Part shown: positions 29,366 to 46,960 of the stretch, one piece after another | Layout of the letters: each line of letters begins with the position of its first letter | Numbering within the stretch: the stretch's first letter is position 1 | IMG/VR virus record: IMGVR_UViG_3300020202_000061 | Span: 124,001-188,000 of that record | Direction: 5' to 3' (one strand) | DNA length: 64,000 nucleotides | Made by a program: the position numbers and the translations under genes | Notes under the pieces: generated by a model | What the model was told of the DNA's origin: nothing | Seen by the model: the letters and a program-made list of their open reading frames with translations, nothing else | The model's database searches: none

Positions 29366-30004
29366 TTAGGACCCAAACTGACGCTTAAACTCCGCAGCAA
29401 TGTCGCCGCTATGGAAAGGAAGCACACGAAGCACTCGATTCAGATGCTTGCAGACAACACCACGTTGCGTGGGATTGCGCTCACCAGGGTAGCGTTCTTC
29501 CGGGAAGATAGCCGCATCCAATTGCGCGAGAATTTGCTGGTAGCCCCAGTAGAGAAAGCTGGGATCGGTGCAGTGTAGGCGAAGGTTCCCGACCCACAGA
29601 ATCATGCGGGCCTTCTCGTTGGCCTTGAGGTCGGCATCCTGACCGACTTGTTCCCACTCATCGAACTTGATCAGGCATTTGTAGACGATACCATTCTCGT
29701 CGTATTCCCGCGAGTTCACGTCGAATATCATGGTGTCTCCATCGAATCCGGCCAACCTGATTCCTTTGAGTTCGTTCGCACGAACATTCTGGTTCAGGAA
29801 GTTGCCGTCGATGAACATGGCGATCTCTTTGTAGGTGGCCTCGTAGAGCGGACGTAGCTCTTTCAGGTCCACCAATAAACCGGGTTGAGCAAGCTTGTTG
29901 ATCTCACTCGGAATGTCCTTGTGCTCGATCAGCAAGTCGTGACGACACTGATTGTGGCAAAACATTCCGTGAATATGACTTGGACGAATCGTGTCTACTT
30001 TCAT
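29366..30004 (-). CDS. Hypothetical protein with SWIM-like Zn motif
   Basis: HCTDPSFLYWG...NP..RG.VCKHL..VL. Confidence 0.6.
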   Translation of the reverse strand: MKVDTIRPSHIHGMFCHNQCRHDLLIEHKDIPSEINKLAQPGLLVDLKELRPLYEATYKEIAMFIDGNFLNQNVRANELKGIRLAGFDGDTMIFDVNSREYDENGIVYKCLIKFDEWEQVGQDADLKANEKARMILWVGNLRLHCTDPSFLYWGYQQILAQLDAAIFPEERYPGERNPTQRGVVCKHLNRVLRVLPFHSGDIAAEFKRQFGS

Positions 30005-30534
30005 GGGAGTTGGTTCTTCCAGGCTTCGATCCGGTCGTTGTGGGAATCGGTCGTGTCGTGAATGGTTGGGTCCGGGTTCGCAGCATTGCCTAACGCTCCG
30101 TATGCCCGATAATCATCATTCCCGTACATCCGACCATATCCGGATTCCTGACCGGTCCCGATCCGCAGCCCCTTCCGGGTCTTTCCACGGAAGTCGCGCA
30201 TGGCCTTGGTCGTGGCCCAGCTACCGACCACCATGAAGATCAACAGCCAGACATTCTCCGGGGTCAAGTCAATGGCCTTTGCCCAGGCCGTAAAACCCTC
30301 CACGTCGAAGATTGGCCAAGCCATGATCGCCATGGCCCCGAACAGCATAAGCAGCCTTGGCAGGCGGGAAATCCCGCTTATGGCACGATCAAAACGAGTC
30401 TGCGGCTGAGCGACCTCATCCGGACGCTCCCCAGCGGTCATTCCACCCATGATATTCCCACCCATGGACTGAACTATCTGCCAGCCCTGACTAAGCATGC
30501 CCATACCTGGAAACGGCACATCGATTACCCTCAC
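30001..30534 (-). CDS. Holin, GTA 3TM type
   Basis: FDRAI.G..RLPR.L..FG...W..FD..F..A..L.PE.VWLL..VVG.W resembles the GTA holin family; TAAATA upstream. Confidence 0.65.
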   Translation of the reverse strand: MRVIDVPFPGMGMLSQGWQIVQSMGGNIMGGMTAGERPDEVAQPQTRFDRAISGISRLPRLLMLFGAMAIMAWPIFDVEGFTAWAKAIDLTPENVWLLIFMVVGSWATTKAMRDFRGKTRKGLRIGTGQESGYGRMYGNDDYRAYGALGNAANPDPTIHDTTDSHNDRIEAWKNQLP

Positions 30535-30567
30535 CTGTCCGGGTATTTAGGCGAAAATATTCTTGAA

Positions 30568-32868
30568 CTATTTGCCCTGGATGAACTTCTTCCGGAGAGT
30601 CCGGATGGTGTGGGCGGATTTCGGGTCCTTGAGGAGAGCCGCCAATCCGAAATGCAACGGCTGGGGCCACTCACCCGGATAAACCCAGGTTGAAGTTTCC
30701 GTTTCCCAATCCAGGACGGGTTCGAATTCGTTCTGGACCACAGCTAGGAAATTGTAGTAATGGAATTCACCCCGCTTGAACACATAGAGTGGGATCATCT
30801 GTACCGGACCACGATATCCAGCTTCTTCCTGGACCTCGCGCTGAGCGGCCTCGATGGGGTTTTCACCCCGGTCGATAGCGCCACCCCAGGTCCCCCAAGT
30901 GTGAGGTTGTTCGACATGACCCGTGGTGCGGCCGGGTGGTGGTCGTTTGGAGCGAAACGGCAGTAGGATGCGACCCGTGTCTTTGGCTATTATGATGCAA
31001 CCAGCACCACGGCGACCCCAAAATCCGGTTTGACGGAGTGCTTCACCGTGGTCCTGATCGTCTCTCACAACCTCGCGGAGATTTTGGATGGTCCGTGGAA
31101 TACGTCCGGTCTTCATGAACTGCTGGACACCTACACCCTTGATGTCGTGCCATTTCCCATCTACTACCAAACCGATTTGGGTGATCGGTTGTTCATGGTG
31201 CTTAGCAATCCATTGTGCGGTCAAGGCACCATCTCGGGGACTCGCTGCATCTATGGACAATTGTCCACGGTTATTGAATCCGACACGCACCCATCCCTGA
31301 CTGTTTGCGTATTCCACGACATCATCAGTCCGGGTGAATCCTGGACCTGCTTTCCAGTTAGCACCAAACAATGAGAGATTTTTCAGGAACACGTCGTAAT
31401 GGTGTGAGGCGTCTGGGTCCGCCTCGGGATCACTTAGACCCCAATCCACTGTGAGATGTTGTCCAGTGCTGGGTTTGAACCAGTAGCCTATAGTGTGGAA
31501 TTCGGTGGTTTTGCCCTTGTCGATGATCGGATAGAGTTTACCTATGGGATTGGCGGTTTCCGCAGCCATTCTACGGCCGATGGGTTCACTAGGTTGGATC
31601 ACCCATTCACCCTTGGGAGTCATTACTCCGGGGAAATGACTCGATGAGATGCGCTCGTAATACTGATCCATGAAGTCATCCGGAACCTTGCCGTAGTGCA
31701 GGATCAGAGGGCGGTCAAACGGACCAGCCTTGGACTCCTCGTCCCAGAGTTGGAGGATGCAGATAATCTTTTGAGCCCCACGGAATCCGATAACGTATTC
31801 GGTGCGTAGAGTATGAGCACCTGCTCCACCCTCGGGCTTGTAGGCGGAGGCTTTATAGCGACGGGTGAGCAAATCAATTGCTCTGGCGTAGTTGTCCTCG
31901 GCTACATTCGTTGGCGGTATTTCTGGTTGGTTTTTGATCTTTCTCAGATGATAAGCGATCCCGTAGAGACTTCCGCGAGCAGATTTTTCCATGGCGTGCG
32001 AAATGATACGCATGAGGAAAGCTTCAAACACCATATCGGTGAGCTTTCGATTGAGTGGTCCGGTCCCTTCTAGTAGATCGTGAAGCGATTTGGCGAACAC
32101 CTCTAACATCTGTTCACGATATTGCGGATCATCATAGTAGTACATCGCAGCCACACCATAAGCATCTCTGGCCAAACCAGGATGCACTTTGTGAATCATC
32201 TCGGCGAAAGCACGTGGAATTACATTGGTCTGACTATCCTCATCGGCTAGACCGGCTTGTTCCCGGATCATCGCACACACGATCATCGGGTAGGAGTTGA
32301 ACTTACGCATGGCGCTGGTTGAACTACTCCAGGCGGTCATCATGTTGGTGGACCAATACGATCCGCCAATACTAGCACGGCTTGGAAAGGCTTCACTACC
32401 GGGGTCCTTATCGCGATCCCAATACTTGGCAGGCGGATTCGGCACCACACCATGTGTCATGATCGAACGCAAGGCGTGTGTGGTGGTACCGTGGTACATG
32501 ATGATGGGCTTGCGAAACTGAGCCTCTTTGATCTCGGTGCGACCATGAAATACGTCTTCACTATCGTAGTAGTTCGTATCGACCATGTGGTCTTTGTCTT
32601 TGAAATAGTCCGCGAGCCTAACGGCTTTTGCAGCTTCTTCACGATCCAAGAATTCTCCGGTATCCGTGTAAAATCCCTCGATCACATCATCCCCTAGCAT
32701 GAATTCAAACTCGTCGTAGTCGGTTTCGGGATTCATTCCAAGGTCCTTCATGGCCTGGATCATGGCATCCCGATGAACCGTCTTGGCTTTTCCGATGATG
32801 CGATCCTCTGGTGTGTAAAGGAATGCCACACCTTCGATCTTGGCCTCTAACAGATCGGTCAGCTTCAT
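30568..32868 (-). CDS. Multi-domain putative head-packaged polyprotein: ART-like domain, repeated unknown domain, C-terminal Nudix hydrolase
   Basis: MKLTDLLE start; IMYHGTT; Nudix box GGAIDRGENPIEAAQREVQEEAGY; IKE and LRE at domain boundaries. Confidence 0.7.
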   Translation of the reverse strand: MKLTDLLEAKIEGVAFLYTPEDRIIGKAKTVHRDAMIQAMKDLGMNPETDYDEFEFMLGDDVIEGFYTDTGEFLDREEAAKAVRLADYFKDKDHMVDTNYYDSEDVFHGRTEIKEAQFRKPIIMYHGTTTHALRSIMTHGVVPNPPAKYWDRDKDPGSEAFPSRASIGGSYWSTNMMTAWSSSTSAMRKFNSYPMIVCAMIREQAGLADEDSQTNVIPRAFAEMIHKVHPGLARDAYGVAAMYYYDDPQYREQMLEVFAKSLHDLLEGTGPLNRKLTDMVFEAFLMRIISHAMEKSARGSLYGIAYHLRKIKNQPEIPPTNVAEDNYARAIDLLTRRYKASAYKPEGGAGAHTLRTEYVIGFRGAQKIICILQLWDEESKAGPFDRPLILHYGKVPDDFMDQYYERISSSHFPGVMTPKGEWVIQPSEPIGRRMAAETANPIGKLYPIIDKGKTTEFHTIGYWFKPSTGQHLTVDWGLSDPEADPDASHHYDVFLKNLSLFGANWKAGPGFTRTDDVVEYANSQGWVRVGFNNRGQLSIDAASPRDGALTAQWIAKHHEQPITQIGLVVDGKWHDIKGVGVQQFMKTGRIPRTIQNLREVVRDDQDHGEALRQTGFWGRRGAGCIIIAKDTGRILLPFRSKRPPPGRTTGHVEQPHTWGTWGGAIDRGENPIEAAQREVQEEAGYRGPVQMIPLYVFKRGEFHYYNFLAVVQNEFEPVLDWETETSTWVYPGEWPQPLHFGLAALLKDPKSAHTIRTLRKKFIQGK

Positions 32869-33758
32869 GCCTGATGATCCTCGGCCGCGCCACGAGTTCT
32901 CTGAGTCCTACCCTGGCCTCGGTTCAGAACTTCCTTGGCTCTGATCTTGTCGAGCAGACCCGGTAGGCTGCGCATGAACTGCTGATCATTCCGGGCATTC
33001 TGATTGAATGAGTCATGGGTGAGTTTGACCGGGTCCTTTGAGAGATCAATACCCTCAGGCGTCCGGTTGGAAACCCAAATCAGATAGAGGTCCTTGCCCC
33101 GACGCGGACTCACGAATACAGCCTCACAACGATAGGGATTACCACCCTTGGTCTGCCACACGCGCATAGCCTCGGCCATGTCCTTGAAGATGGAGGAGGC
33201 ACCATACACGGTCAGAGTGTTGCGGAAAAACGCCCCATCGTAGCCCTGAATGGTCCATTCCTCGTTGGTGTGTTTCCCGGCTTTCTCCCACATGGTCTTC
33301 TTGATGAAGTTCATGTCAGTGTAGTCCTGACGGTAGATGTGGGAGGAGTTTGGCATGCCTCCGGAATGTCCAGCCTGAGCCCACCCGGCATTTTGCTCTT
33401 GCCGCTCACGCTCACGGTTCTGCTGCTCACGACGGGCATCCGCAGCACGCCAAAAATCATCCCAGGCTTTCTTCTTGCCGGGATCGGATGGACGACCACC
33501 CGGATAGTTCCAATATTCGGAATTCGGTGTAGTCTCGTTGTGGACTCCATCCTTGATCAATCCGTATGCCTGATTGATTTGTTTGGCCAGAGCCTCGTTG
33601 CCACCGCGATCCGGATGGTTATGGAAGATGATTCTGCGGTAGGCCCGTTTGATATCGGCCGGGGTCTTGCCCTGGGGATCGAAACCCGCGTTGGTGAAAA
33701 CCTCCACGGCTTGAGCCACGGTCATCTCTTTGAGGATACGGAGTTCGTTCAGTTTCAT
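32865..33758 (-). CDS. J-domain (DnaJ-like) protein
   Basis: IKRAYRR..HNHPDRGG....KQINQAY (HPD motif); MKLNEL start. Confidence 0.8.
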   Translation of the reverse strand: MKLNELRILKEMTVAQAVEVFTNAGFDPQGKTPADIKRAYRRIIFHNHPDRGGNEALAKQINQAYGLIKDGVHNETTPNSEYWNYPGGRPSDPGKKKAWDDFWRAADARREQQNRERERQEQNAGWAQAGHSGGMPNSSHIYRQDYTDMNFIKKTMWEKAGKHTNEEWTIQGYDGAFFRNTLTVYGASSIFKDMAEAMRVWQTKGGNPYRCEAVFVSPRRGKDLYLIWVSNRTPEGIDLSKDPVKLTHDSFNQNARNDQQFMRSLPGLLDKIRAKEVLNRGQGRTQRTRGAAEDHQA

Positions 33759-36700
33759 GATAGTGATTTCCTCAGAGCGGTCCCCTCTGGTGTGGTATTG
33801 GTCCAGACCAGCTTCTCCTGGGGAAACTCCTTCTGCAATTCCTTGACCAATGCGGTGCCGATTCCACGACGCTGGAACTCCGGTTCCACCTGTATATAGT
33901 TGATGAAAATTTTCCCCTGATACTGTGTCCAGTTCAGACGACCCGCAACCCGCCTGGGTGGCCAGAGGTCCCCGGCGGTGGAGCGGTCGTAGAAATAGAT
34001 GGTCCCATCGGTCTGACCATGGTGGTGACCGGTCACATCGTTATGGAAGCTATACTGCTGGGGTAGGTCTGCACTTTCCACTACCTGCTTGAGGCTTTCG
34101 TGCTCGGCTTCCTGTTGGGCGATGAACTGCTTCAGTGGCATCTTGGGTAGACCCTGAACCTGTTGGTTCATATTGTGGGACTTCCAGAGTTCTTTCCAAT
34201 GCAACATTCTGGCTTTGGTGAATGGAATCCCATACACGTTGAGACCCTGCTGCTCCATCGCCTTCATTTCGGCATACCGAATCGGAGGCATATCGTGTTC
34301 GGCACGCATGCGATTTCCGATGGCCTCGTGCTGCTCCTCCGCACGTTTCTTCAGGAACATGGCGCGATCTTCAGGAGACCAATAGGTCTGTTTCTGCTCT
34401 CCCTTGAGACGCTCGAAACGACGAACGATGTCCGAGACGATCTGATCCAGACGAGCCGAACCACTGTACTCTTTCACCTCAATATCACCAACTTCCGTAC
34501 GGACATTCACCTCAATCACGTGATTGGTGTGTTTGCGGTCGTACTTGTGAGGCTTCTCCATGGCGGGACGTTGATTATAGTAGTTGTTGGGGCGTTCGAT
34601 CTGGATTTCGATACGACGACCCGCTTTGGTCCAGAGATAGGCCCAGCCCATAAGATTCGAGGTTTCGGTTTTGTCGGTGAGTTTGTCATCCAGGGCGTTC
34701 GCGATCTTCCGGGCAAACTTCCTAATAAACTCCCTGTTATGACCGGGCTGGTTGATGGTCATGTGATCGGCCTCACCACGACCCGGACGTAAATCATAGG
34801 TCTCAATCACTTTGAAGCTGGCGCGGGTCAAGAAGATGATCTGCTCGGGCTCTCGCTCATTGATCGCGCCGGTCCCCTCATCGATTACCGCATCATATCC
34901 AGCCTTCAGCAAGAGTTGAGTTTGTTCCTTGGCCGAGCGCATGGGCCACTTCTTGGTGCCCCAGCCGTCCTCGGTGGTTTCACCCTCGTGGTTGATCTGG
35001 AATGCCCGCATGAACGTGTTTACTGGGGCATACTTGCCGGTCCACTGATAGTTACGCTTGATCCAGCGCAGGTCTTTATCGGATACGTTGAGACCCATCC
35101 GCCACAGCATGTTGCGGACACGACCCCAACCGAGATTGTTCAACTCTTTTAGACGAAGTGGATTCCTCGCAGTGTTCTGGAGCACACGCACGTAGCGGGC
35201 CGCAGCCCCATACCAGATGTCGGCGGGATGCCGCAGCACATACTTCAGAGGGTAACCATAGACTCCCATGGGGTCAGTGTGATTGGGCTTGTCATAGGCG
35301 GAGCGATCCAGCTTGTCGTTCCGGAAATTCCGGAACTGCACGTAGTAGTGCTCCGGATTGATTTCCTTCTTGCGGACCATGTTGCGATACTTGCGATGGA
35401 ACGCCTCGAAGCGCTCCGGGAACATGTCCTGGTAATGGACCTCGTTGAGTTGTCCCTCATTGATGCCGGACCGGAGAAACTTGGTGAGTGCGGCATACCC
35501 GTCCAGGGTGATACCCTTGTGGAACTCTCCTTGTATACCGATGTTGACACGCTCGGTTTCGCGAGGATCGATCATACGCTTGTTCATCAGAGCACGAATC
35601 GTAGCCTGGGCATCCAACATCGTGGGGGCATCGATCATCAGTTTCGAGCCCACGATGGAACCGCGCGTCCAACCATTCTCGTAAGCCTGACGATAACGTT
35701 CCTCATCCATGAGGTCGCCCAGGTCTACCCCTTCAGGGGCTTTGATCCCATACTTGTCAGGTTCCGCAAAGAGCTTCTGCTCGTGATGTGGTTCCGCATA
35801 GATGTCGGCAGTATCATTCAGGAATGGGTGCCACTGTTCGAGCTTACCACTCCTGGCGTGATACCAGAACTTGGTGATATTCGGATTGATGTCGCTTTCA
35901 CTGAGGAACTGACTGATCTCTCCTGGCGACCGATAAAGCATGCTACCTACATCCGCCATATCCACGAGAAGATTATCGATGGTTCTGCGATCAATCAGTT
36001 TTCGACTGATAAGGTAGCGTAAAGTAGCCTGAGCTTCGACTTTGTTGTTGGAATCCAGATAAAGATCACCCCGACTCTTGATAACTCCACGAACCCAACC
36101 ATCCTCGGCGGCCTCCACGGAATAGTCGGCTCCGGTTTTACCTTCCCGATAATCCAGTCCGAACTTGGCGGGATCAGCCATTAAAGCTTCATCATGGTGG
36201 GGTCCGCCTGAATCGACATTACTGAAACGAACGGTCCATGGTACGAACTGCTTGGTTCGAACGTTGAACCAAAACTTGGTCGCAACACGAACCTCCTCAG
36301 TGAGTGATTCGGCCACCTTGCGCTTGAACGGGACGAACAAGGGATTCTCGGATGCGACGGGAGCGACCTTCTTGAACTTGGTGTGACCACCATGTCGAGG
36401 GTTTGGGAATCCCTCATCGTGAACCTGCTCGGGCCAATCGATCTGACCATGCGAGTAGGGCCACAATCCGAGACGCTCCAGGACACGCTTTAGTTTAGAC
36501 CCGGTCAGGATGAAATCACCCTGTTGACGACGATCCGTATAGTAGTCTCCCGACTCGACGCCACCGCCGCCATCCTCATTATCATAATCGTCGGGATCAC
36601 GATGTTTGAAATCGTCCTCGGCATGCTTTAGAACGACTAATGCGCCGTGATTCAGGAATTCTTGCGGGGTGATCGTGCGCTTTCCGAGTTTCGTCGCAAC

Positions 36701-36940
36701 GTGATGGACAATCGCATTCAGGGCTTTGCCAAGCTCGGGCTTATCGGCGGCGAACACCAACGGGTAATAGCCCATCTCTCGGGCATCCGCTTCTCCACCC
36801 AATCCGTACGCGTCCTGGACGAAATCACCCACACGCGGCTCCAATCCCCATCGCTGCACACTGGGATCACGCGCCACATCCAGTGTGGTGCCATGGTAGA
36901 GGGTGCGTGGCATACTCTCGTGCAGGTCGGTCAGCTTCAT
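33755..36940 (-). CDS. Multi-domain putative head-packaged polyprotein: ART-like N-terminus, two copies of an unknown domain, C-terminal GNAT
   Basis: MKLTDLHE start; TLYHGTT; IQVEPEFQRRGIGTALV...TPEG GNAT motif A; LTE, LSE, INE/LNE, VVE at domain boundaries. Confidence 0.7.
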   Translation of the reverse strand: MKLTDLHESMPRTLYHGTTLDVARDPSVQRWGLEPRVGDFVQDAYGLGGEADAREMGYYPLVFAADKPELGKALNAIVHHVATKLGKRTITPQEFLNHGALVVLKHAEDDFKHRDPDDYDNEDGGGGVESGDYYTDRRQQGDFILTGSKLKRVLERLGLWPYSHGQIDWPEQVHDEGFPNPRHGGHTKFKKVAPVASENPLFVPFKRKVAESLTEEVRVATKFWFNVRTKQFVPWTVRFSNVDSGGPHHDEALMADPAKFGLDYREGKTGADYSVEAAEDGWVRGVIKSRGDLYLDSNNKVEAQATLRYLISRKLIDRRTIDNLLVDMADVGSMLYRSPGEISQFLSESDINPNITKFWYHARSGKLEQWHPFLNDTADIYAEPHHEQKLFAEPDKYGIKAPEGVDLGDLMDEERYRQAYENGWTRGSIVGSKLMIDAPTMLDAQATIRALMNKRMIDPRETERVNIGIQGEFHKGITLDGYAALTKFLRSGINEGQLNEVHYQDMFPERFEAFHRKYRNMVRKKEINPEHYYVQFRNFRNDKLDRSAYDKPNHTDPMGVYGYPLKYVLRHPADIWYGAAARYVRVLQNTARNPLRLKELNNLGWGRVRNMLWRMGLNVSDKDLRWIKRNYQWTGKYAPVNTFMRAFQINHEGETTEDGWGTKKWPMRSAKEQTQLLLKAGYDAVIDEGTGAINEREPEQIIFLTRASFKVIETYDLRPGRGEADHMTINQPGHNREFIRKFARKIANALDDKLTDKTETSNLMGWAYLWTKAGRRIEIQIERPNNYYNQRPAMEKPHKYDRKHTNHVIEVNVRTEVGDIEVKEYSGSARLDQIVSDIVRRFERLKGEQKQTYWSPEDRAMFLKKRAEEQHEAIGNRMRAEHDMPPIRYAEMKAMEQQGLNVYGIPFTKARMLHWKELWKSHNMNQQVQGLPKMPLKQFIAQQEAEHESLKQVVESADLPQQYSFHNDVTGHHHGQTDGTIYFYDRSTAGDLWPPRRVAGRLNWTQYQGKIFINYIQVEPEFQRRGIGTALVKELQKEFPQEKLVWTNTTPEGTALRKSLS

Positions 36941-36942
36941 CC

Positions 36943-37479
36943 TTAGCCCCTCGGCGGTACCGGTAGGCGGAACCGCTCCGCACGACGCAGCCAGCCCTTC
37001 AGAAACACCTGCTGTTTCGGATCATTCGCGGCGATCTGCTGGAAGAACTTGATGCGCTCGTCCACGATGGCGTTCTGGAAGTATGGACCCATCGCCTGCT
37101 GGGCGGCAATCGCACGGTCACGGCTTTGCGGACCTAGGATGCCGTCCTGATCGACCGGACCAAACCCTGCGAGGTTGATCACCCTCTGCATGATCCGGAT
37201 CGCCTTACGTGGCCCGTGGTTGATCCGCATGTCCAGGATCAGGGTCATCGGGGGATTCGGCAGGGTGTGGATGCGTGGGTCCGTCAGGTATCGCTTCTCA
37301 TAGATTTCACGAGCCTCACCCTCGGTGAGCTTCTTTACGTCGTCAATCCGGGCCGGACGATGCAACCATTCCCGCAGGGTTTTCTGGGTGATTCCGAAAT
37401 TTGTCGGCCCACCTCTGTCATTGGGATGATTGACATACCCACCCTCATGCCTCAAAACCTCACTGATTGGATCGACCAT
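36943..37479 (-). CDS. Endolysin, glycoside hydrolase family 108 with peptidoglycan-binding domain
   Basis: HEGGYVNHPNDRGGPTNFGIT; DGILGP; Q..FLKGW.RR; TAAATA upstream. Confidence 0.92.
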   Translation of the reverse strand: MVDPISEVLRHEGGYVNHPNDRGGPTNFGITQKTLREWLHRPARIDDVKKLTEGEAREIYEKRYLTDPRIHTLPNPPMTLILDMRINHGPRKAIRIMQRVINLAGFGPVDQDGILGPQSRDRAIAAQQAMGPYFQNAIVDERIKFFQQIAANDPKQQVFLKGWLRRAERFRLPVPPRG

Positions 37480-37668
37480 AGCTGTTTTCTCCCAGATTCC
37501 CAGGTATTTAGGACTCCGGGAGGTTAAAATGAAAACCCGAATACTGTGTGATATGTGTCACGAAAAAAGTATGGTAAACCCCTGATTTGTTTGTTGACAG
37601 GAGAAAAACCCTGGGGTATTCTCTGCTGGCCCACGCTGTGTGGGTAACCGAATGGAGAGCGCAAGCAA

Positions 37669-38538
37669 ATGAAGCGTATTCTTTTCTCGGCCATGTTGGT
37701 CCTGGGTGCCCTCGCGGTTACCCCGGCAATGGCCTCAGGCAACCATCACAACAATGGTTGTGACGGCGGAAACAACTCCTGCAATACTACGACCAACACC
37801 ACGAACAACACCACCAATAACCAGGGCGGCCAAGGCGGCGCTGGTGGTCAGGGTGGTGCGGGCGGCCAGGGCGGCACTGGTGTCGGTGTCGGCGTGGGCG
37901 TGGGAATCGGTGTGGGTCAGGGCGGAAACGCCACGAACTCCAACACCAACAACGCCAACAACACCAACACGAACACCCAGGGCCAGGGTCAAACCCAGGG
38001 CCAGGGTCAGTCCCAGTCGAACTCGAACGTCGTCACCAACGTGAACGGCCAGAACCAGAACCAGTCCAACTCCAACAACAACTCCGACACCAACAACAAC
38101 GACGTGTCGGTGAACGTCGAAGGGGCCGACGTGGAGGCCGCCGCCAACGCGGTGCCGGTCTACAACAGTCCCATCGTCGCCAGCGAGGACACCTGCATGG
38201 GCTCGATCAGTGGCGGCGCGGGCTTCGGCGCGATGTCGTTCACGGTCGGCGTCACCATCGGTTCGACCTACACCGATGAGAACTGCCAGAACCTCAAGTG
38301 GTATCGCGAGTTCGCCAAGTCCGGTCTGGACAAGGCCGCGATGAGCATCGCCTGTCAGGCGAACGATGGTCGCAACGTGGTCGCCCTGGAAGCGCAGGGT
38401 TTCGACTGCGGCGATCTGACCGGCGGCACGGTTCAGGTGTCGGCGGTTTCCGTGAAGGATGCCGTGCAGACGGCGTCGGCGGCTCCGGCTGAGGACAAGG
38501 TCATCAATCCGACTCACAAGCGCGGCAACAACAAGTAA
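37669..38538 (+). CDS. Secreted Asn/Gln/Gly-rich low-complexity protein
   Basis: Signal peptide (AMA site), N/T/Q/G tracts, Cys-containing C-terminal domain; own promoter and terminator. Confidence 0.75.
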   Translation: MKRILFSAMLVLGALAVTPAMASGNHHNNGCDGGNNSCNTTTNTTNNTTNNQGGQGGAGGQGGAGGQGGTGVGVGVGVGIGVGQGGNATNSNTNNANNTNTNTQGQGQTQGQGQSQSNSNVVTNVNGQNQNQSNSNNNSDTNNNDVSVNVEGADVEAAANAVPVYNSPIVASEDTCMGSISGGAGFGAMSFTVGVTIGSTYTDENCQNLKWYREFAKSGLDKAAMSIACQANDGRNVVALEAQGFDCGDLTGGTVQVSAVSVKDAVQTASAAPAEDKVINPTHKRGNNK

Positions 38539-38565
38539 GCAGCGCCTCGGCGTCGGGAAAAGGGT

Positions 38566-38591
38566 GAAAGGGCGGCTTCGGCCGCCCTTTC
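38566..38591 (+). terminator. Hairpin/terminator
   Basis: GAAAGGGCGGC-TTCG-GCCGCCCTTTC. Confidence 0.7.
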
Positions 38592-38633
38592 CATTTGTCT
38601 CCCAGCAGCCTATATAGGTTGGGGGATTTTTGT

Positions 38634-39512
38634 ATGAAATTCGATCTTATCAGTGATTTCCACGTCGAAATGAATGATCCGTTCTCGACCCAATCCACGT
38701 GGCGTGACGGTGATCCGACCTTCTATAATTGGCCGAGACAGAAGAAGTCCGATGTCCTGGTGATCGCGGGGGATTCCTCGAACCGTCCAGAATTCACTAT
38801 AGAAGTGGTGAAAGAGGCCCGAGCCTATTACGAGTCGGTGCTGTTCGTTGATGGCAACCACGAGCACTACGTGGGCTATCAGAACCATTCTCGCACGGTC
38901 GGCCGCAACATGAACGAGTTGAGGAAGTTCGCCACGGAAACCCCTGGGGTAACCTATTTGGATGGTGAGATCACGGCTCGTTTCGGCTCGACCCTGGTGA
39001 TCGGAGCGAATGGTTGGTACGACTGGAAAGGCAATCAGATTCTGTCTCGTGAAATGCAGCACATGTACTGGAAGTCGGATTCCAACGATGCTACCTGCAT
39101 CCGTTTCGATCCGGATGGGTATGCGGACAAACTCGCTCGGTCGCATGCGGATCAGCTTGTGGCTCATGTCACAGCAGCCCAATCTGATGAGGCGGTGGAT
39201 AAAATCCTCGTCATTACCCATACCATCCCCAACCTCAAAGGAATCGTTCCTGATTCACACCGTTGGGGGTATTTGAACGGGTCCTATGCGAATACCGAAA
39301 TGCAACGCGTGGTCAAGGCGGATACGGCGAAGAAAATCAAGATTTGGGTTTACGGGCACACCCATTTCCTGTATGATTTCGTCGATCAGGGGGTGCGTTA
39401 TGTGACGAATCCCCGTGGTTATCGCGGTGAGAAGCGCAGCCCGGATTTCACCGGGATCAAGCAGATCGATCTCGATGACATCGGTTCAGCATTTGGGGGA
39501 ATTGATGTGTGA
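38634..39512 (+). CDS. Calcineurin-like metallophosphoesterase
   Basis: SDFH, AGD, GNHE, TH, GHTH, NPRGY motifs. Confidence 0.9.
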   Translation: MKFDLISDFHVEMNDPFSTQSTWRDGDPTFYNWPRQKKSDVLVIAGDSSNRPEFTIEVVKEARAYYESVLFVDGNHEHYVGYQNHSRTVGRNMNELRKFATETPGVTYLDGEITARFGSTLVIGANGWYDWKGNQILSREMQHMYWKSDSNDATCIRFDPDGYADKLARSHADQLVAHVTAAQSDEAVDKILVITHTIPNLKGIVPDSHRWGYLNGSYANTEMQRVVKADTAKKIKIWVYGHTHFLYDFVDQGVRYVTNPRGYRGEKRSPDFTGIKQIDLDDIGSAFGGIDV

Positions 39513-39711
39513 TTATGCCGAACGCCCGTTGAACCCGTCTGAGGCTGAATTGGTTCGTGCCGGAGCCATCATCAGCCGCTATCAAGAGGGAGACCTGTTC
39601 TCCCGAATCAAGGCGATCCACGCGGGTATCTCGATGGCTTTCGGCACTCCTATGCCCACGGATGAGGAGCTTCGAGCCCTCATGGACGTGATCACGCCAG
39701 AGGATCAGTAA
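39505..39711 (+). CDS. Hypothetical protein
   Basis: Start at ATG 39505 overlapping previous gene. Confidence 0.5.
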   Translation: MCDYAERPLNPSEAELVRAGAIISRYQEGDLFSRIKAIHAGISMAFGTPMPTDEELRALMDVITPEDQ

Positions 39712-40234
39712 ACACCGGGGTTTCGCCTCGGAATAGGATGTTGGCGTCCTTGAAATCATCCATGCATCCGCGTGCGCGAGGCGCTTGTTTGGTCGAATAG
39801 ATCAGGTTAAGCGCCTCGACCATTTTGGGGAATTTCTGAGTCCACTCTGCGTGGTGCTCAATTATGAATTCCGCACGATCTGGTCGTTTCCGTTCGAGCG
39901 CGTCATAGTAGGACGTGATGAAGTTGTAGAGAGGAAACGGAATCTCCCTTATTTTTAGCGGCTCTAGGCGTTGAGCCACGTAGGCATCACTGAGCCAAAC
40001 CAGCTTCCCGATGATGCGGGGCATATGTGGGTTGTCCGCGTTGGCGCGTGCCACCTTGAGGAACTCGAAGTAGCAGTTGTCATAGGTCGCGAACACCTTG
40101 AGCACATACTTCGCGCCGGGTTTTTGCCAAACCGCACCATGGAATCCCTGGCCCAACCCCTGGTATCCGGCGTCAATCAAACGCTGGTCGATCTGGTTGA
40201 ACCGCTGAGGACGGGTGAGTTCGAATAACTTCAT
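39692..40234 (-). CDS. Minimal protein kinase-like protein
   Basis: LGQGFHGAVW, VLKVF, DFKDANIL, TDP; MKLFEL start 7 nt after TAAATA. Confidence 0.75.
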   Translation of the reverse strand: MKLFELTRPQRFNQIDQRLIDAGYQGLGQGFHGAVWQKPGAKYVLKVFATYDNCYFEFLKVARANADNPHMPRIIGKLVWLSDAYVAQRLEPLKIREIPFPLYNFITSYYDALERKRPDRAEFIIEHHAEWTQKFPKMVEALNLIYSTKQAPRARGCMDDFKDANILFRGETPVFTDPLA

Positions 40235-40301
40235 GGTATTCTATTTATTTCCTTGACGTTTTTCACAATATCTGGTATAAACGGCCATCAGGAGGACACC
40301 G

Positions 40302-40844
40302 ATGGCCACAGGCACCCGTTACGTTCCGATCCAGATCAGCCAGATGCAGGCGGTCCTGGAGCATGACATGGGTTTCGTCCGTGCCGACGAGAGCACGTCC
40401 TGGGAGGCTATCTGGACCCGTCAGGTCGCCACCAAGGGTGGTCGCACGTTTCCCTATTCGGTCAAGGTCTATTCCAGCGTGGACCTGCGCACCAACGTGA
40501 GCCGCGACTCCGGCGAGGACGCGATCCGTCTGGTTCTCAAGGACGACATTACTGGCTACGCCGTGAAGGCGGCTGAGAAGCGGGTGTTCCGCACGAAGTC
40601 CGCCCTGATCAATCTGCGCGAGCGTGCGCGTGAACTCTTCCAGGAAGTCGTTGACGGTCCTCATTGCCCGAAGTGCGGAGCCCTGATGAAGGCCCGCCAG
40701 GGCGGGCCGGGCAAGCATTGGTTCCTCGGTTGCACCCATTACAACCCAGACAAGTCCTGGCACTGCACGGGCACGCGCCGGGTCAGTGATATCACCCCGG
40801 AGCAGAAGGTCGCCATGGGTATCCCCACCGATACCACGTCATGA
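40302..40844 (+). CDS. Protein with topoisomerase-type C4 zinc ribbon
   Basis: CPKCGALM..R......FLGC..Y....C; sigma70 promoter and GGAGG RBS. Confidence 0.7.
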   Translation: MATGTRYVPIQISQMQAVLEHDMGFVRADESTSWEAIWTRQVATKGGRTFPYSVKVYSSVDLRTNVSRDSGEDAIRLVLKDDITGYAVKAAEKRVFRTKSALINLRERARELFQEVVDGPHCPKCGALMKARQGGPGKHWFLGCTHYNPDKSWHCTGTRRVSDITPEQKVAMGIPTDTTS

Positions 40845-41047
40845 GCCGATTGCGGGGGATGTTCGCGGCCGTCAACGGGTGCAAGATCGAGGCACTGAAC
40901 CGGACGGCCACACTGGTGCGGAAGGAAATGGGCTCCTACTATCAGGAGAACCCGTTCAGTTTGGCCGATGATGAGAATCGCGCCGGATGGAAACGCGCCC
41001 GAAAGGACGGTTGGCGAGTCCGGCCGGTGATGGTGACGGTGAAATGA
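40841..41047 (+). CDS. Hypothetical protein
   Basis: ATGA coupling. Confidence 0.55.
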   Translation: MSRLRGMFAAVNGCKIEALNRTATLVRKEMGSYYQENPFSLADDENRAGWKRARKDGWRVRPVMVTVK

Positions 41048-41316
41048 GCCAATGGCGGAATATCGCGTCCGCGCCTAAGGATCGCCGCATTCTGTGTTGG
41101 GCTCCGGACTGGGCCGAGGGTATCGAGGGAAAGCTCGACGCCGCCATGTTTCTGGTCTGGAAAACCAACCCCCGCATCACCAGATGGCATAACGAGGGGA
41201 AATACCTGGAATACTCCGAGAGCTATTACGGGGTTCCCGACGAGCTAGACGATTACGAGTTGGCGTTACCCGGTGGGGGTCCGACTCTGTGGTTCGACAT
41301 ACCCGCGCCGGAATGA
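41044..41316 (+). CDS. Small phage protein (W..I..APKD type)
   Basis: MSQWRNIASAPKD...PT.W..P. Confidence 0.6.
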   Translation: MSQWRNIASAPKDRRILCWAPDWAEGIEGKLDAAMFLVWKTNPRITRWHNEGKYLEYSESYYGVPDELDDYELALPGGGPTLWFDIPAPE

Positions 41317-41325
41317 GAGGGATTT

Positions 41326-41589
41326 ATGCCGTTCAGTTTGCCCAAGGATGATGGGCGCTTCAAAGTCGGGGATACAGCGTGGATTCACCTGGGCAACCCG
41401 GATGTCGAAAATGCCCGTGGCTTGCACGAGGCCAAGATCATCCACATGTTCGAACACCAAGGCCAGAGCCTGTATGTGCTGGAAGTGGACACTCCGATGG
41501 ACCCCTATCATGAGTGCCGCGAGTTCGGCACCATGTCGGATTCCCCGGACGAACCGATCATGTTCTATCGCGGATTCGCGAGCGCCTGA
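41326..41589 (+). CDS. Hypothetical protein
   Basis: ORF track; GAGG RBS. Confidence 0.6.
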   Translation: MPFSLPKDDGRFKVGDTAWIHLGNPDVENARGLHEAKIIHMFEHQGQSLYVLEVDTPMDPYHECREFGTMSDSPDEPIMFYRGFASA

Positions 41590-42331: not shown

Positions 42332-42334
42332 TTC

Positions 42335-42363
42335 TTGACAAATCCTTGAGTTTCTGGTAGACT
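42335..42363 (+). promoter_or_regulatory. Early sigma70-like promoter with conserved quasi-palindromic spacer (representative; also 4212, 5777, 42924, 54045, 60647, 61463)
   Basis: TTGACA-AATCCTTGAGTTTCTGG-TAGACT; spacer consensus approx AAACCCTRGGGTTT. Confidence 0.75.
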
Positions 42364-42389
42364 CCTCATTGAAATCAGGAGGCTGCGTA

Positions 42390-42647: not shown

Positions 42648-42657
42648 AGCGCGGTCT

Positions 42658-42927: not shown

Positions 42928-42972
42928 CAATTCCTGGGGTTTCTGCTAGACTTCGCATCATCAGGAGGACCC

Positions 42973-43185: not shown

Positions 43186-43196
43186 GAGCGCCCCGC

Positions 43197-45373: not shown

Positions 45374-46960
45374 ATGGGGAATGCAGGTACTTTTGTCGGA
45401 GCCAAACTCACAGAGGATTGCGCAGATCGCCTGATTGAGTGGATGACCCAGCAGGGTATCCCGAATCCGACTCCCAAAGAGGAGCTTCACTGTACGGTCG
45501 TCTACTCGGAAGAGCGTGAGATCAAGATCACACCGCTCGCCTATGAGCCGCCGCTGGAGATCGATCCGCGATTGTTCAAGTTCAAGCACTTCGGCGAGAA
45601 CCGCGAAGTTCTGGTCCTGGCATTCGACCGGCCTGAACTCGCTTACCGACATAAGCTGCTTCGCGAGAAGTATAAGCTGGGCTGGAAGTTTCCCAGCTAC
45701 ATCCCGCACGTCACTCTGAGTTACAACGCTCCGGAGCACATCGAGGTGTTGCCGGATTTTCCGCTGGTGTTCCAGGGAGAAGAGGTTGGTGGGTTCAATC
45801 CACCGGAGGAGTCTGCTGCGGCCGAGCATCTGGAGAAGAACGAACTCAGTGAGTATTACGAGATCGTCAACGATGAGCCCGTGCGCAAGAAGAAGCGCCC
45901 AGAACCGCCGAAGAAGTTGATCGCGCAGAATCTCATAAAGTTGGGCCTGAAAGAGGATCGTCATCATGAGGACCATCCTCGTGTGCAGGAGCCGGGTCCA
46001 CAACAACTCTCGTATACGAGTTCGATGCGACAGAACGCTGTGGGACAGAAGTGTCAGGTCATCGTGCAGATGCCGGTGCAGGACTTCCTCCGTCTGACCA
46101 CGACGAATGACGCGGATATCGAGACGGTCTTCCGCAAGCAGGCTCATCCGCTGGATTCCTACAATCACTGGAACCGCATGGGCGATGAGCGTGAATACGC
46201 GTCCCAGGTCAATCAGGGCAAGACCTCACAGGATAAAGATTATCAGTGGGGACGGATCGTCGGTCCGTTCTTGCGCATCGACATTGAGCCGCCAGCGGGC
46301 ACCTTCGGTAAGGTCTCCGGCCACGAAGGTCGTCATCGAGCAGCAGCCGTGTGGAACGCCGGAGGTAAAGTGATCCCGGTCGCGTTGTGTCTGCGTCCCT
46401 TCAAGGGAATGTTCCCGAAGAGCTATGGACCCGAATACGAGGCACATCGGGAGCACATCCCGATGGCCGTGCACGGCCAGTTTCGTTCGATCAGTGTGAG
46501 CACGAGGAATTGGAAGGTGATCGAACCAGACCTGCTCAAGCCGTATCGTCGCACGAACGAATCAGTGCTGATGGAGGTCGCAGGCTCGTTCTCGTGGTTT
46601 CATCCTAAGACCGAGCAAGAGGTCACTGCGGAATTCGGAAAGAACGAACACTGGGACCTCGTCAAGGCGAATCCGACGAGGTTTGGCATGACTCGTGCGG
46701 AAGTGAATCAGCCTAATGCGCGGATCGATGATGTCTTCAAACATGGCTGGGTTCGAGTCAACTATTACAGAGGTGTCTGGTACTTTCATGGACAAACCGC
46801 TGCATTGGTGCAGGCCGCAGCCAAGCACTACGCGTGGGCACATGAAGGACTACACGAGGTGATTCTGGATATCGTCGAACCCAACTACAAGTCCTACACC
46901 CTGATGGGTCCGGCCATCGAAAAGTTTCTCAAGCACGGAGTGCTGCCGGAGTGGCGCTAA
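45374..46960 (+). CDS. acb1: Acb1/T4 gp57B-like 2H phosphodiesterase fused to a ParB/Srx-like domain and the repeated unknown domain
   Basis: GTFVGAK...IPNPTPKEELHCTVVYS...LVL.FD..EL..RH...YIPHVTLSY aligns by eye with T4 57B; GHEGRHRAAA ParB-like motif. Confidence 0.8.
   Translation: MGNAGTFVGAKLTEDCADRLIEWMTQQGIPNPTPKEELHCTVVYSEEREIKITPLAYEPPLEIDPRLFKFKHFGENREVLVLAFDRPELAYRHKLLREKYKLGWKFPSYIPHVTLSYNAPEHIEVLPDFPLVFQGEEVGGFNPPEESAAAEHLEKNELSEYYEIVNDEPVRKKKRPEPPKKLIAQNLIKLGLKEDRHHEDHPRVQEPGPQQLSYTSSMRQNAVGQKCQVIVQMPVQDFLRLTTTNDADIETVFRKQAHPLDSYNHWNRMGDEREYASQVNQGKTSQDKDYQWGRIVGPFLRIDIEPPAGTFGKVSGHEGRHRAAAVWNAGGKVIPVALCLRPFKGMFPKSYGPEYEAHREHIPMAVHGQFRSISVSTRNWKVIEPDLLKPYRRTNESVLMEVAGSFSWFHPKTEQEVTAEFGKNEHWDLVKANPTRFGMTRAEVNQPNARIDDVFKHGWVRVNYYRGVWYFHGQTAALVQAAAKHYAWAHEGLHEVILDIVEPNYKSYTLMGPAIEKFLKHGVLPEWR

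What the first reader, a model, noticed from the sequence alone, without database searches (positions are those of the whole stretch)
35460..36290. Uncharacterised ~130-aa domain present four times in three proteins
Seen: pattern W(F/Y)...(T/S)....H(H/W)......P..(F/Y)G.....GW(V/T)R at about 35900-36290 and 35460-35880 (tandem), about 31075-31500, and about 46580-46957 (fused to Acb1). Conserved His and Arg suggest ligand binding or catalysis. Fusion to an anti-CBASS enzyme hints at an anti-defence role such as a nucleotide sponge (inference).
Basis: partly seen in the sequence, partly recalled or inferred. Interest (0 to 1): 0.65.

Follow-up and report, generated by a model that had tools for sequence, protein, structure and literature searches.

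The report
Unannotated repeat domain of injected phage proteins
A soil jumbo phage carries at least 16 copies of a roughly 130-residue protein domain that is in no database searched here, and it sits in large multi-enzyme proteins that probably travel inside the phage head into the host; its job is unknown, most likely binding some ligand during the first minutes of infection.

Summary
The four copies align significantly: BLASTP E 1e-18 and 1e-8, and a leave-one-out HMM finds the weakest copy at 2.4e-7. They share invariant Trp, His and Gly-Trp-x-Arg.

The window lies in a 347.5-kb jumbo phage from soil. Genome-wide there are at least 16 copies in 11 proteins. A profile search finds 884 protein clusters elsewhere, with up to 10 detected stretches per protein (up to 9 at stricter domain thresholds).

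The domain matches nothing in Pfam, PHROGs, NCBIfam or PDB sequences. Two confident AlphaFold models (pLDDT 88 and 87) have no significant fold match; the best is gelsolin-like at Z about 5.

Partner domains are those typical of "polyvalent" injected phage proteins: ART-PolyVal, Acb1/2H, NUDIX, GNAT, Zeta toxin, SAM lyase. Many carriers begin with a short leader, M-K/R-L-x-D-L-L-E, that resembles the T4 capsid-targeting sequence. The genome also encodes T4-type gp21 protease and gp23 capsid protein.

My best reading is a head-packaged, injected, non-catalytic ligand-binding module. The ligand is unknown. It is a new domain family inside a known kind of system.

The parts
35885..36298 (-). Domain copy 1 (P0001 aa 215-352)
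   Evidence: Alignments A1 and A2. HMM envelope aa 220-354. AF2 model pLDDT 88.2, pTM 0.84.
35456..35893 (-). Domain copy 2, in tandem with copy 1 (P0001 aa 350-495)
   Evidence: BLASTP against copy 1: E 1e-18, 34% identity. HMM envelope aa 355-497.
31069..31509 (-). Domain copy in P0002 (aa 454-600), directly upstream of the NUDIX domain
   Evidence: BLASTP against copy 1: E 1e-8. Profile search E 2.9e-16.
46565..46957 (+). C-terminal domain copy in P0003 (aa 405-535)
   Evidence: Leave-one-out HMM E 2.4e-7. Conserved at 76% identity in the orthologue P0128.
33755..36940 (-). Gene P0001, 1061 aa. Order of parts: leader, N-terminal region with a YHGT motif, two domain copies, about 500 aa with no match, C-terminal GNAT.
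   Evidence: ORF. GNAT Acetyltransf_1 E 2.2e-5, 25.1 bits against cut-off 20.7, aa 1005-1052.
30568..32868 (-). Gene P0002, 766 aa. Order of parts: leader, unknown N-terminal half, domain copy, NUDIX.
   Evidence: ORF. NUDIX E 3.4e-14, aa 619-736 = window 30661-31014. PHROG 1198 MutT/NUDIX hydrolase.
45374..46960 (+). Gene P0003. Order of parts: Acb1-like 2H phosphodiesterase, middle region, domain copy. The likely true start is the ATG at 45374; the ORF opens at a TTG at 45353.
   Evidence: Acb1 PF23474 E 2.6e-22, aa 12-141 = window 45386-45775. The orthologue P0128 starts at the corresponding Met and also carries DUF5661.
36914..36940 (-). N-terminal leader of P0001 (MKLTDLHES), a candidate capsid-targeting and cleavage signal
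   Evidence: The leader motif recurs on about 16 ORF starts in the genome. It is enriched in database homologues, 45% against 12% in a control.
32842..32868 (-). N-terminal leader of P0002 (MKLTDLLEA)
   Evidence: Same evidence as for the P0001 leader.
32865..33758 (-). Gene between P0001 and P0002: 297 aa, same leader (MKLNELRILKE) plus a J-domain. It belongs to the same operon of leader-bearing proteins and has no copy of the domain.
   Evidence: DnaJ PF00226 E 1.3e-5, 25.6 bits, just under the 27.8 cut-off. Leader.
39692..40234 (-). 180-aa gene with the same leader (MKLFELTRPQ). No Pfam match and no copy of the domain.

Best explanation
The roughly 125-135-aa alpha/beta unit is a self-contained domain family not present in any database searched here. 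Its signature is W...G...H...G-W-(I/V)-R. It is specific to proteins that T4-type-head jumbo phages most likely pack into the capsid and eject into the host with the DNA.

**Proposed sequence of events (inferred unless marked).**
1. A short N-terminal leader, M-K/R-L-x-D/E-L-(L/F)-x-E, acts like the 10-aa T4 capsid-targeting sequence. It docks the protein on the scaffolding core.
2. The gp21-type prohead protease removes the leader after the Glu.
3. The mature proteins are ejected with the genome.
4. Inside the host, each copy acts as a non-catalytic binding module. Its near-invariant Trp, His, Trp and Arg would form the binding site, most plausibly for a phosphate-bearing aromatic ligand. That could be a nucleotide-derived signal, an NAD/ADP-ribose-type molecule or a nucleic acid.
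5. In proteins made only of the leader plus 1-5 copies, the module would act by itself, by sequestering or masking the ligand.
6. In polyvalent proteins it would sit beside nucleotide-processing or protein-modifying enzymes (Acb1-like 2H, NUDIX, ART, GNAT) as a targeting or substrate-capture module.

**Shown:** homology of the copies, the conservation pattern, the domain architectures, the leader motif, and the T4-type head genes.
**Inferred:** packaging, cleavage, ejection, ligand binding and the identity of the ligand.
For: **A real family.** There are 16 copies in the genome with W, H and GWxR invariant. Outside it there are 884 representative clusters at E<=1e-3 and 162 at E<=1e-10. Over 174 near-full-length copies, conservation is W 98%, H 97%, G 96%, W 88%, R 94% against a background of about 13-26% identity.

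**Independently folding unit.** Two AF2 models have pLDDT 88.2 and 86.6 and the same order of elements, three beta-hairpins each followed by helix. The domain also occurs alone as 137-161-aa proteins, including four tandem single-domain genes on L011.

**Binding module rather than enzyme.**
- Up to 10 detected stretches per polypeptide (up to 9 at stricter domain thresholds), and some proteins consist only of leader plus copies.
- Only one further polar position is conserved, and only at 68% (Asp/Glu).
- No catalytic fold was matched.

**Polyvalent, injected context.** Partner domains are ART-PolyVal, 2H/Acb1, NUDIX, GNAT, Zeta toxin, LMWPc, Peptidase_C39, Tpt1, SAM lyase and the LigD phosphoesterase. 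This is the repertoire described for injected polyvalent proteins (PMC5512222).

**Packaging.**
- About 16 ORFs in the genome start with the leader, including 7 of the 11 domain-bearing proteins and a double ART-PolyVal protein.
- 63 of 140 database homologues have hydrophobic-x-Glu with the Glu at residue 7-12, against 12% of internal-Met control windows.
- Standalone members start M-x-T-F-K-Q-F-L-x-E.
- T4 uses a 10-residue N-terminal targeting sequence that gp21 cleaves, and T-even internal proteins are diverse anti-defence proteins that share only that sequence (PMC3012670, PMC9026906, PMC10229621).
- The genome has a T4-type head module: Gp23 E 2.7e-81, Peptidase_S77 E 1.1e-23, and a coiled-coil scaffold-like gene between them.
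Against: - No experiment or proteome shows packaging or cleavage. The leader is inferred only from resemblance and enrichment.
- P0003 and two other carriers lack the leader.
- I could not inspect model coordinates, so I do not know whether W, H, W and R cluster on the surface. They could be structural, for example a buried Trp core with His/Arg hydrogen bonds.
- Losses of His and Arg are independent: only 1 of 442 copies lacks both. That gives no sign of a coupled functional site.
- The pI of copies ranges from 4.5 to 9.2, so there is no uniform nucleic-acid-binding charge.
- There is no similarity to any known nucleotide-binding or sponge fold.
- The only pairing test gave no verdict.
Confidence: 0.4

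Rival explanations
1. **Structural internal-head or ejection-protein module.** The domain would be the building block of this phage lineage's internal head proteins, analogous to T4 IPI-III or the phiKZ/SPN3US inner-body and ejection-protein paralogue families. It would help pack or organise DNA. It could also serve as a small, tail-channel-compatible "bead" that carries fused enzymes through the tail. The conserved residues would be structural or would contact DNA.
For: - Leader plus T4-type head module.
- Many paralogues per genome, and some proteins made only of repeats.
- The beads-on-a-string architecture.
- Independent loss of His and Arg is compatible with structural roles.
- Giant phages do pack large masses of paralogous ejection proteins (abstracts of PMC5694885 and PMC7411985).
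Against: - Conservation of His at 97% and Arg at 94% on a background of about 15-25% identity is unusual for a pure spacer.
- The domain also occurs in proteins without a leader (P0003, and the genes on L005 and L006).
- The pI is not consistently basic.
- The domain is kept next to specific enzymes, as in the copy-then-NUDIX pair in P0002 and P0073.
Confidence: 0.25
2. **Injected nucleotide sponge.** Each copy, or a pair of copies, would sequester cyclic oligonucleotide or ADP-ribose-derived immune signals from CBASS, Thoeris, Pycsar or type III CRISPR. Tandem arrays would multiply capacity. Divergent paralogues would cover different signals.
For: - Recurrent fusion with Acb1/2H (7 of 54 large homologues) and with NUDIX.
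- Aromatic plus Arg/His signature.
- Multiplicity and divergence of copies.
- Known sponges are similarly small proteins, for example Acb2 (PMC10312549).
Against: - No sequence or fold similarity to any known sponge.
- Equally frequent fusion to ART-PolyVal and to other enzymes not tied to signalling nucleotides.
- The number of molecules a capsid can deliver limits stoichiometric sequestration (my inference).
- No oligomer evidence (one search gave no verdict).
Confidence: 0.17
3. **New small enzyme.** The domain would be, for example, a metal-independent phosphoesterase, RNase or nucleotide-modifying enzyme. The invariant His and Arg, with the partly conserved Asp/Glu, would be the catalytic residues.
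For: - His and Arg are conserved at 97% and 94%, with Asp/Glu at 68% on strand 5.
- Polyvalent proteins are rich in novel enzymes, and several LPDs were predicted to be enzymatic from such patterns alone (PMC5512222).
Against: - Up to 10 detected stretches in tandem in one polypeptide is atypical for an enzyme.
- The third polar residue is too poorly conserved.
- No catalytic fold was matched.
Confidence: 0.1
4. **Gelsolin-like protein binder.** The repeats would bind a host filament or other host protein such as MreB, FtsA or ParM-type actins, as eukaryotic gelsolin repeats bind actin.
For: - Gelsolin, villin, adseverin and archaeal gelsolin domains are the top VIA-align rows for both independent models: Z 4.9-5.0, 83-93 residues aligned, rmsd 3.0-3.7 A.
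- Villin is also the first Foldseek row for the second model, at E 0.19.
- Both families occur as tandem repeats of about 120 aa.
Against: - Z about 5 is below the tool's own stated noise level, where the typical best Z for an unmatched model is 7-8.
- The secondary-structure order differs from gelsolin (from my own knowledge of the gelsolin fold).
- Sequence identity is 6-14%.
- The calcium and actin-binding motifs were not examined.
Confidence: 0.05

Closest known systems
LPD domains (large polyvalent-protein-associated domains 1-40) of Iyer et al. 2017, PMC5512222
   Same: - An uncharacterised domain embedded in large phage proteins that combine ART, 2H, NUDIX, GNAT and other activities.
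- It also occurs in solo form near structural genes.
- Its function is inferred only from conservation and context.
   Different: - It matches none of the LPD families held in Pfam: 115 copies were scanned and no family recurred.
- It is far more repetitive, with up to 10 detected stretches per protein and 16 copies per genome.
- It was not found by tblastn in 50,697 GenBank phage records or 72,556 plasmids.
- I could not check the LPDs that never entered Pfam, because the supplement is not held.
T4 internal proteins IPI, IPII, IPIII and Alt, with their capsid-targeting sequence
   Same: - A short N-terminal leader ending in hydrophobic-x-Glu.
- A gp21-type protease and gp23-type capsid protein in the same genome.
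- Diverse cargo sharing only the leader.
- Tandem loci of small leader-bearing genes (L011).
   Different: - The cargo here shares a conserved fold and signature, whereas T-even internal proteins are unrelated to one another.
- The cargo can be polyvalent proteins of 1,000-4,000 aa.
- Packaging and cleavage are not shown for this leader.
Phage nucleotide sponges (Acb2, Tad1, Tad2)
   Same: - Small, non-enzymatic phage proteins.
- A plausible aromatic plus basic ligand-contact signature.
- Genomic and architectural association with anti-CBASS functions.
   Different: - No detectable sequence or fold relationship.
- Arranged as tandem repeats within a polypeptide, rather than the homo-oligomers formed by known sponges such as hexameric Acb2.
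- No binding evidence.
Inner-body and ejection-protein paralogue families of phiKZ-like and SPN3US-like giant phages
   Same: - Many paralogous head-internal proteins.
- Processed after Glu by a gp21-related protease.
- Ejected into the host.
   Different: - No sequence match: no PHROG hit for 115 copies.
- The host genome here has a canonical T4-type Gp23 capsid protein.
- The family is fused to known counter-defence enzymes.
Gelsolin/ADF-H repeats
   Same: Alpha/beta units of about 120 aa that occur in tandem. They are the best, though weak, structural neighbours of both models.
   Different: Z is only about 5, the element order differs (from my own knowledge of the gelsolin fold), and no shared motifs were seen. 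I treat it as a common arrangement, not homology.

Membership tests
Polyvalent proteins (Iyer et al. 2017) | Several domains of disparate biochemical activity in one phage or plasmid polypeptide | tested here: met
   - P0001: two copies plus GNAT.
- P0002: copy plus NUDIX.
- P0003: Acb1 plus copy.
- Homologues carry ART-PolyVal, 2H, Zeta toxin, Peptidase_C39, SAM lyase and others.
Polyvalent proteins (Iyer et al. 2017) | Delivered into the host with the DNA, as shown by virion association | not testable with these tools
   Indirect evidence only: the CTS-like leader, the T4-type head genes, and neighbours that include lysozyme, PAAR and tail genes.
Pfam LPD families and any other Pfam, PHROG or NCBIfam family | Profile match of the domain itself | tested here: not met
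   - The four window copies at E<=10 give only one 13-bit chance hit.
- 115 copies against Pfam: no family hit more than once.
- 115 copies against PHROGs: none.
- 16 copies against NCBIfam: one chance hit.
T4-type CTS-targeted internal proteins | N-terminal leader of about 10 aa with hydrophobic-x-Glu at its end | tested here: met
   - About 16 ORF starts in the genome.
- 32 of 149 homologues match a strict motif.
- 63 of 140 match hydrophobic-x-Glu, against 12% of controls.
T4-type CTS-targeted internal proteins | gp21-type prohead protease and gp23-type capsid protein in the same genome | tested here: met
   Peptidase_S77 E 1.1e-23 and Gp23 E 2.7e-81, both above their cut-offs and adjacent, with a scaffold-like gene between them.
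T4-type CTS-targeted internal proteins | Demonstrated packaging into heads and removal of the leader | not testable with these tools
   Needs virion proteomics or a leader-reporter fusion.
Nucleotide sponges (Acb2, Tad1, Tad2) | Sequence or fold membership in a known sponge family | tested here: not met
   No Pfam hit. No PDB sequence hit below E 0.01. No sponge structure among the listed Foldseek, VIA or BFVD rows.
Nucleotide sponges (Acb2, Tad1, Tad2) | High-affinity binding of an immune signalling nucleotide | not testable with these tools
   A biochemical assay is required.
Nucleotide sponges (Acb2, Tad1, Tad2) | Oligomeric or paired arrangement that creates the binding sites | tested here: inconclusive
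   Complex prediction of copy 1 against copy 2 gave no verdict (score 0.00). The tool states this is no evidence either way.
Gelsolin/ADF-H fold | Structural match clearly above background | tested here: not met
   Best Z is 4.9 and 5.0, below the tool's typical background of 7-8. Foldseek E 0.19.
Acb1 (the N-terminal domain of P0003 only) | Pfam PF23474 match above the gathering score | tested here: met
   79.5 bits against a cut-off of 27, aa 12-141. Also PHROG 755, annotated RNA ligase, consistent with the weak 2_5_RNA_ligase2 (2H-superfamily) Pfam hit. Enzymatic activity was not tested.

The most novel reading that the evidence does not exclude
The family would be a new fold of capsid-preloaded immune-signal binders. 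These would be the first anti-defence "sponges" delivered ready-made with the genome. They are arrayed in tandem, up to 10 detected stretches per polypeptide, and have diversified into many paralogues so that one phage can neutralise several nucleotide-based defence systems before any of its genes are expressed. The short M-K/R-L-x-D-L-L-E leader would be a portable capsid-targeting tag for jumbo phages with T4-type heads.
Probability: 0.15. Interest if true: 0.85.

Novelty: new variant of a known kind. Interest (0 to 1): 0.6.

Why it matters
- **An unannotated family of some size.** At least 884 clusters of phage proteins, some nearly 4,000 aa long, contain a domain that the databases searched here do not describe. 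A model of it would annotate a sizeable block of "dark" sequence in soil and other environmental jumbo phages.
- **A likely early-infection role.** The domain is tied to Acb1, NUDIX, ART and similar enzymes, and to a leader that looks like a capsid-targeting signal. It therefore probably acts in the first minutes of infection, when counter-defence is decided.
- **If it binds a ligand,** it could be a new class of counter-defence module and a new fold for nucleotide or nucleic-acid recognition.
- **If the leader works as in T4,** it offers a way to load cargo into large phage heads.
- **It is testable.** Standalone proteins of 137-161 aa exist and can be expressed as they are.

Tried and rejected
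**Searches that found nothing for the domain**
- megablast of window 30000-47000 against GenBank phages.
- tblastn of four different queries against 50,697 phage records, and of one query against plasmids.
- The word-index protein search found only the phage's own fragment and one relative.
- Pfam, PHROGs and NCBIfam.
- PDB sequences: best E 0.011, over a 54-residue stretch of an unrelated protein.
- Fold searches for two models against PDB by Foldseek, PDB by VIA-align wide, BFVD and the ESM Atlas. There was nothing significant. The best BFVD rows are uncharacterised phage proteins.
- Two protein-atlas feature searches gave no usable lead.

**Calls that could not run**
- The search for related loci found no close relatives for P0001. 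Presence in bacterial genomes is therefore untested.
Contigs of homologues are not held as handles.
- One large alignment failed.

**Tests with no useful outcome**
- Complex prediction of the two tandem copies gave no verdict.

**Ideas rejected**
- The C-terminal repeats of the double ART-PolyVal protein are not distant copies of this domain: hhalign probability is below 1%.
- The N-terminal YHGT regions of P0001 and P0002 are not demonstrably ART-PolyVal: the only BLAST similarity is the leader and that motif.
- Co-loss of His and Arg as a sign of a coupled site is not seen.
- A uniformly basic, histone-like character is not seen.

Full report
The region contains three long genes.
- P0001 is window 33755-36940(-), 1061 aa.
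- P0002 is 30568-32868(-), 766 aa.
- P0003 is 45353-46960(+). Its true start is probably the ATG at 45374, because the orthologue P0128 begins there.

The invariant residues are W10, H35, G47, G67, W68, R70, G126 and F131. Pairwise BLASTP gives E 1e-18 for the tandem pair and E 1e-8 for copy 1 against the P0002 copy. It gives only E 0.024 for copy 2 against the P0003 copy. A profile built from the other three copies recovers the P0003 copy at E 2.4e-7 among all 883 six-frame ORFs of the window, with no other hit. The same leave-one-out test did not recover the P0002 copy. That copy rests on the BLASTP result and on E 2.9e-16 in the database profile search. In window coordinates the copies are 35885-36298, 35456-35893, 31069-31509 and 46565-46957.

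**2. The window belongs to a soil jumbo phage, and the family is much larger than four.**
- The window is bases 124001-188000 of a 347,504-bp IMG/VR virus record estimated 90% complete. The same DNA is held by two soil-metagenome runs.
- A profile made only from the four window copies finds further copies elsewhere in the genome. One is at the N-terminus of a 345-aa protein (E 3e-7). One is a 146-aa stand-alone protein (E 3e-4). One is a protein in a paralogue cluster at genome 5.5-13 kb (E 9e-5).
- Iteration and inspection show that this cluster encodes five proteins with one to three copies each, carrying the motif YGYWIT..G....V....H ... GWIRV.
- All 16 copies align, with W, H and G-W-x-R invariant.

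**3. Distribution elsewhere.**
- The word-index search found almost nothing. The family scans were blank. I therefore ran the exhaustive profile search.
- That search gave 884 representative clusters at E<=1e-3, 162 at E<=1e-10 and 28 at E<=1e-30.
- Hits range from 134-161-aa single-domain proteins to proteins of 2,000-3,974 aa. The search reports up to 10 matched stretches per protein.
- A stricter re-scan found 463 copies in the 151 session proteins, which include the 3 window proteins, with up to 9 in one protein.
- Over 174 near-full-length copies the conserved positions are W 98%, G 83% (hairpin turn), H 97%, G 96%, W 88% and R 94%. An Asp/Glu on the fifth strand is conserved at 68%. Everything else is variable.
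- All members looked up are unnamed metagenomic proteins.
- The contexts retrieved are phage-like: terminase next door on L013, and a 114-kb phage contig for L014.
- On L011, four consecutive genes of 139-149 aa each encode one copy.

**4. It is not a described domain, and its fold is not recognisably a known one.**
- No Pfam family matches the four copies even at E<=10, apart from one 13-bit chance hit.
- 115 diverse copies scanned one by one gave only scattered single hits in Pfam and none in PHROGs. NCBIfam gave one chance hit.
- A 115-sequence profile finds nothing credible among PDB sequences.
- tblastn of four queries finds nothing in 50,697 GenBank phage records, and one query finds nothing in plasmids.
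- AlphaFold2 gives confident models for P0001 copy 1 (pLDDT 88.2, pTM 0.84) and for the stand-alone P0117 (pLDDT 86.6). Both have the same element order, three beta-hairpins each followed by helix.
- Foldseek against the PDB has no hit at E<=0.001.
- The exhaustive VIA-align search gives gelsolin, villin and archaeal gelsolin domains at the top for both models. The values are only Z 4.9-5.0 with 83-93 residues aligned, below the tool's stated background.
- BFVD's best rows are uncharacterised phage proteins. The Atlas gives nothing above TM 0.51.

**5. What travels with the domain.**
- In the window the partners are GNAT (P0001), NUDIX (P0002) and an Acb1-type 2H phosphodiesterase (P0003, 79.5 bits against a cut-off of 27).
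- In 54 large homologues the partners are ART-PolyVal (6), 2H phosphoesterase (7, of which 5 also hit Acb1) and NUDIX (2). Single cases carry Zeta toxin, low-molecular-weight phosphatase, Peptidase_C39, nucleoside deoxyribosyltransferase-like, Tpt1, GNAT, SAM lyase, LigD phosphoesterase and cytidylyltransferase-like domains.
- This is the repertoire that Iyer et al. described for "polyvalent proteins". Those authors predicted that such proteins are injected with the DNA, and they contain 40 uncharacterised LPD domains (PMC5512222).
- The copy-then-NUDIX arrangement of P0002 recurs in P0073. There the NUDIX parts are 56% identical but the copies only about 25%.
- The Acb1 + middle + copy protein recurs at 69-76% identity on another contig, with the same DUF7217 and PAAR neighbours.

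**6. A conserved N-terminal leader.**
- P0001 and P0002 start MKLTDL(H/L)E. The J-domain protein between them starts MKLNELRILKE. A 180-aa gene at 39692-40234 starts MKLFELT.
- Genome-wide, about 16 ORFs start M-(K/R)-L-x-(D/E/Q)-L. These include all five proteins of the 5.5-13-kb cluster and the adjacent protein with two ART-PolyVal domains.
- Among database homologues, 32 of 149 match a strict version of the motif.
- 63 of 140 have hydrophobic-x-Glu with the Glu at residues 7-12, against 12% of internal-Met control windows.
- The stand-alone genes on L011 start M-x-T-F-K-Q-F-L-x-E.
- In T4, a 10-residue N-terminal capsid-targeting sequence brings the internal proteins into the scaffolding core. 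The prohead protease gp21 then cuts it off. Residues 4 and 7 matter for targeting, and residues 8 and 10 for processing. T-even internal proteins are otherwise diverse anti-restriction proteins (PMC9026906, PMC3012670, PMC10229621).
- This genome has a T4-type head module: Gp23 capsid protein (E 2.7e-81), a coiled-coil scaffold-like gene, and a Peptidase_S77 protease (E 1.1e-23), all adjacent.
- I therefore infer that the leader is a capsid-targeting and cleavage signal. This step is not shown.

**7. Mechanism.** My preferred reading (confidence 0.4) is a head-packaged, injected, non-catalytic binding module whose near-invariant Trp/His/Trp/Arg forms the ligand site.
- Tandem multiplicity, proteins made only of copies, the lack of a well-conserved third polar residue and the absence of any catalytic fold all argue for binding rather than catalysis.
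- The partner enzymes point to nucleotide, NAD/ADP-ribose or nucleic-acid ligands.
Nothing contradicts it and nothing tests it.
- The main rival (0.25) is a structural internal-head or ejection module whose conserved residues are structural.
- Three results leave that rival open. His and Arg are lost independently. The pI of copies is variable. I could not inspect coordinates.
- A new enzyme (0.1) and a gelsolin-like protein binder (0.05) are less likely.
- The only pairing test, copy 1 against copy 2, returned no verdict.

**8. Novelty and verdict.**
- The kind of system is known: polyvalent injected proteins and T4-type targeted internal proteins.
- The domain itself is absent from every database I could search. 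It is abundant in uncultivated phages and unusually repetitive.
- The coupling of polyvalent proteins to a T4-like leader was not described in the papers I read.
- I could not exclude identity with one of the LPDs that never entered Pfam, because the supplement is not held.
- I rate it a new variant of a known kind, with interest 0.6.

Noticed in passing
window 36914-36940(-), 32842-32868(-), 33732-33758(-), 40208-40234(-); genome-wide list: About 16 ORFs of the phage begin with the same leader, M-(K/R)-L-x-(D/E/Q)-L-(L/F)-x-E, and four of them lie in this window. The leader resembles the T4 capsid-targeting sequence. It is enriched in homologues from other phages, and the genome has gp21-type and gp23-type head genes.
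   Followed up: yes
window 32865-33758(-): A 297-aa protein with the same leader carries a J-domain with the HPD motif (DnaJ E 1.3e-5, just under the Pfam cut-off). It may be an injected co-chaperone that recruits host DnaK.
   Followed up: partly
window 36899-36910(-) (P0001 aa 11-14) and about 32488-32499(-) (P0002 aa 124-127): Both proteins have a (L/M)-Y-H-G-T-T motif at the start of an unassigned region. The genome's double ART-PolyVal protein has G-Y-H-G-T at the same place after its leader. These regions may be divergent ADP-ribosyltransferase-like domains, but BLAST similarity is limited to the motif.
   Followed up: partly
window 37669-38538(+): A 289-aa ORF with a signal-peptide-like N-terminus is followed by long Asn/Thr/Gly/Gln-rich low-complexity runs (NTTN, GGQGGAGG, GVGV, QGQ). 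This is unusual for a phage gene. A 260-aa antisense ORF overlaps it.
   Followed up: no
window 36943-37479(-), 46957-47649(-), 47646-47936(-), 38595-39512(+): The neighbours of the polyvalent genes are a GH108 lysozyme with PG_binding_3, a DUF7217 protein, a PAAR spike-tip protein and a calcineurin-like metallophosphoesterase. The DUF7217-PAAR pair is also next to the Acb1 + copy gene on a related contig (L017).
   Followed up: partly
window 9630-24052(+): Four very large consecutive ORFs (1578, 1796, 710 and 704 aa) lie in a stretch with raised GC (0.58-0.62 over roughly 10-18 kb) and strong positive GC skew across the whole block. They are probably tail fibre or surface proteins. They were not analysed.
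   Followed up: no
L011 4494-6202(+): Another phage contig (JGI sample 3300010413) has four consecutive 139-149-aa genes. Each has a T4-CTS-like leader (M.TFKQFL.E) plus one copy of the domain. The layout is reminiscent of the hypervariable internal-protein loci of T-even phages.
   Followed up: yes
L007 (genome 7451-10428, minus strand): Two paralogous proteins (549 and 433 aa from the leader Met) share a C-terminal region of about 300 aa downstream of their domain copies. That region has the conserved motif S-P-W-M-x-A-H-R-x-A-H-V-L and no database match was sought. It could be a further uncharacterised module of the leader-bearing set.
   Followed up: no
window about 46350-46390(+) (P0003 aa about 335-345): The middle region of P0003 has a G-H-E-G-R-H-R-A-A motif. 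The orthologue P0128 scores for DUF5661 in this region. The function is unknown.
   Followed up: no
P0073 against P0002: In the conserved copy-then-NUDIX pair, the NUDIX halves are 56% identical but the preceding copies only about 25%. Either the copies evolve much faster than the enzyme or they are not orthologous.
   Followed up: partly
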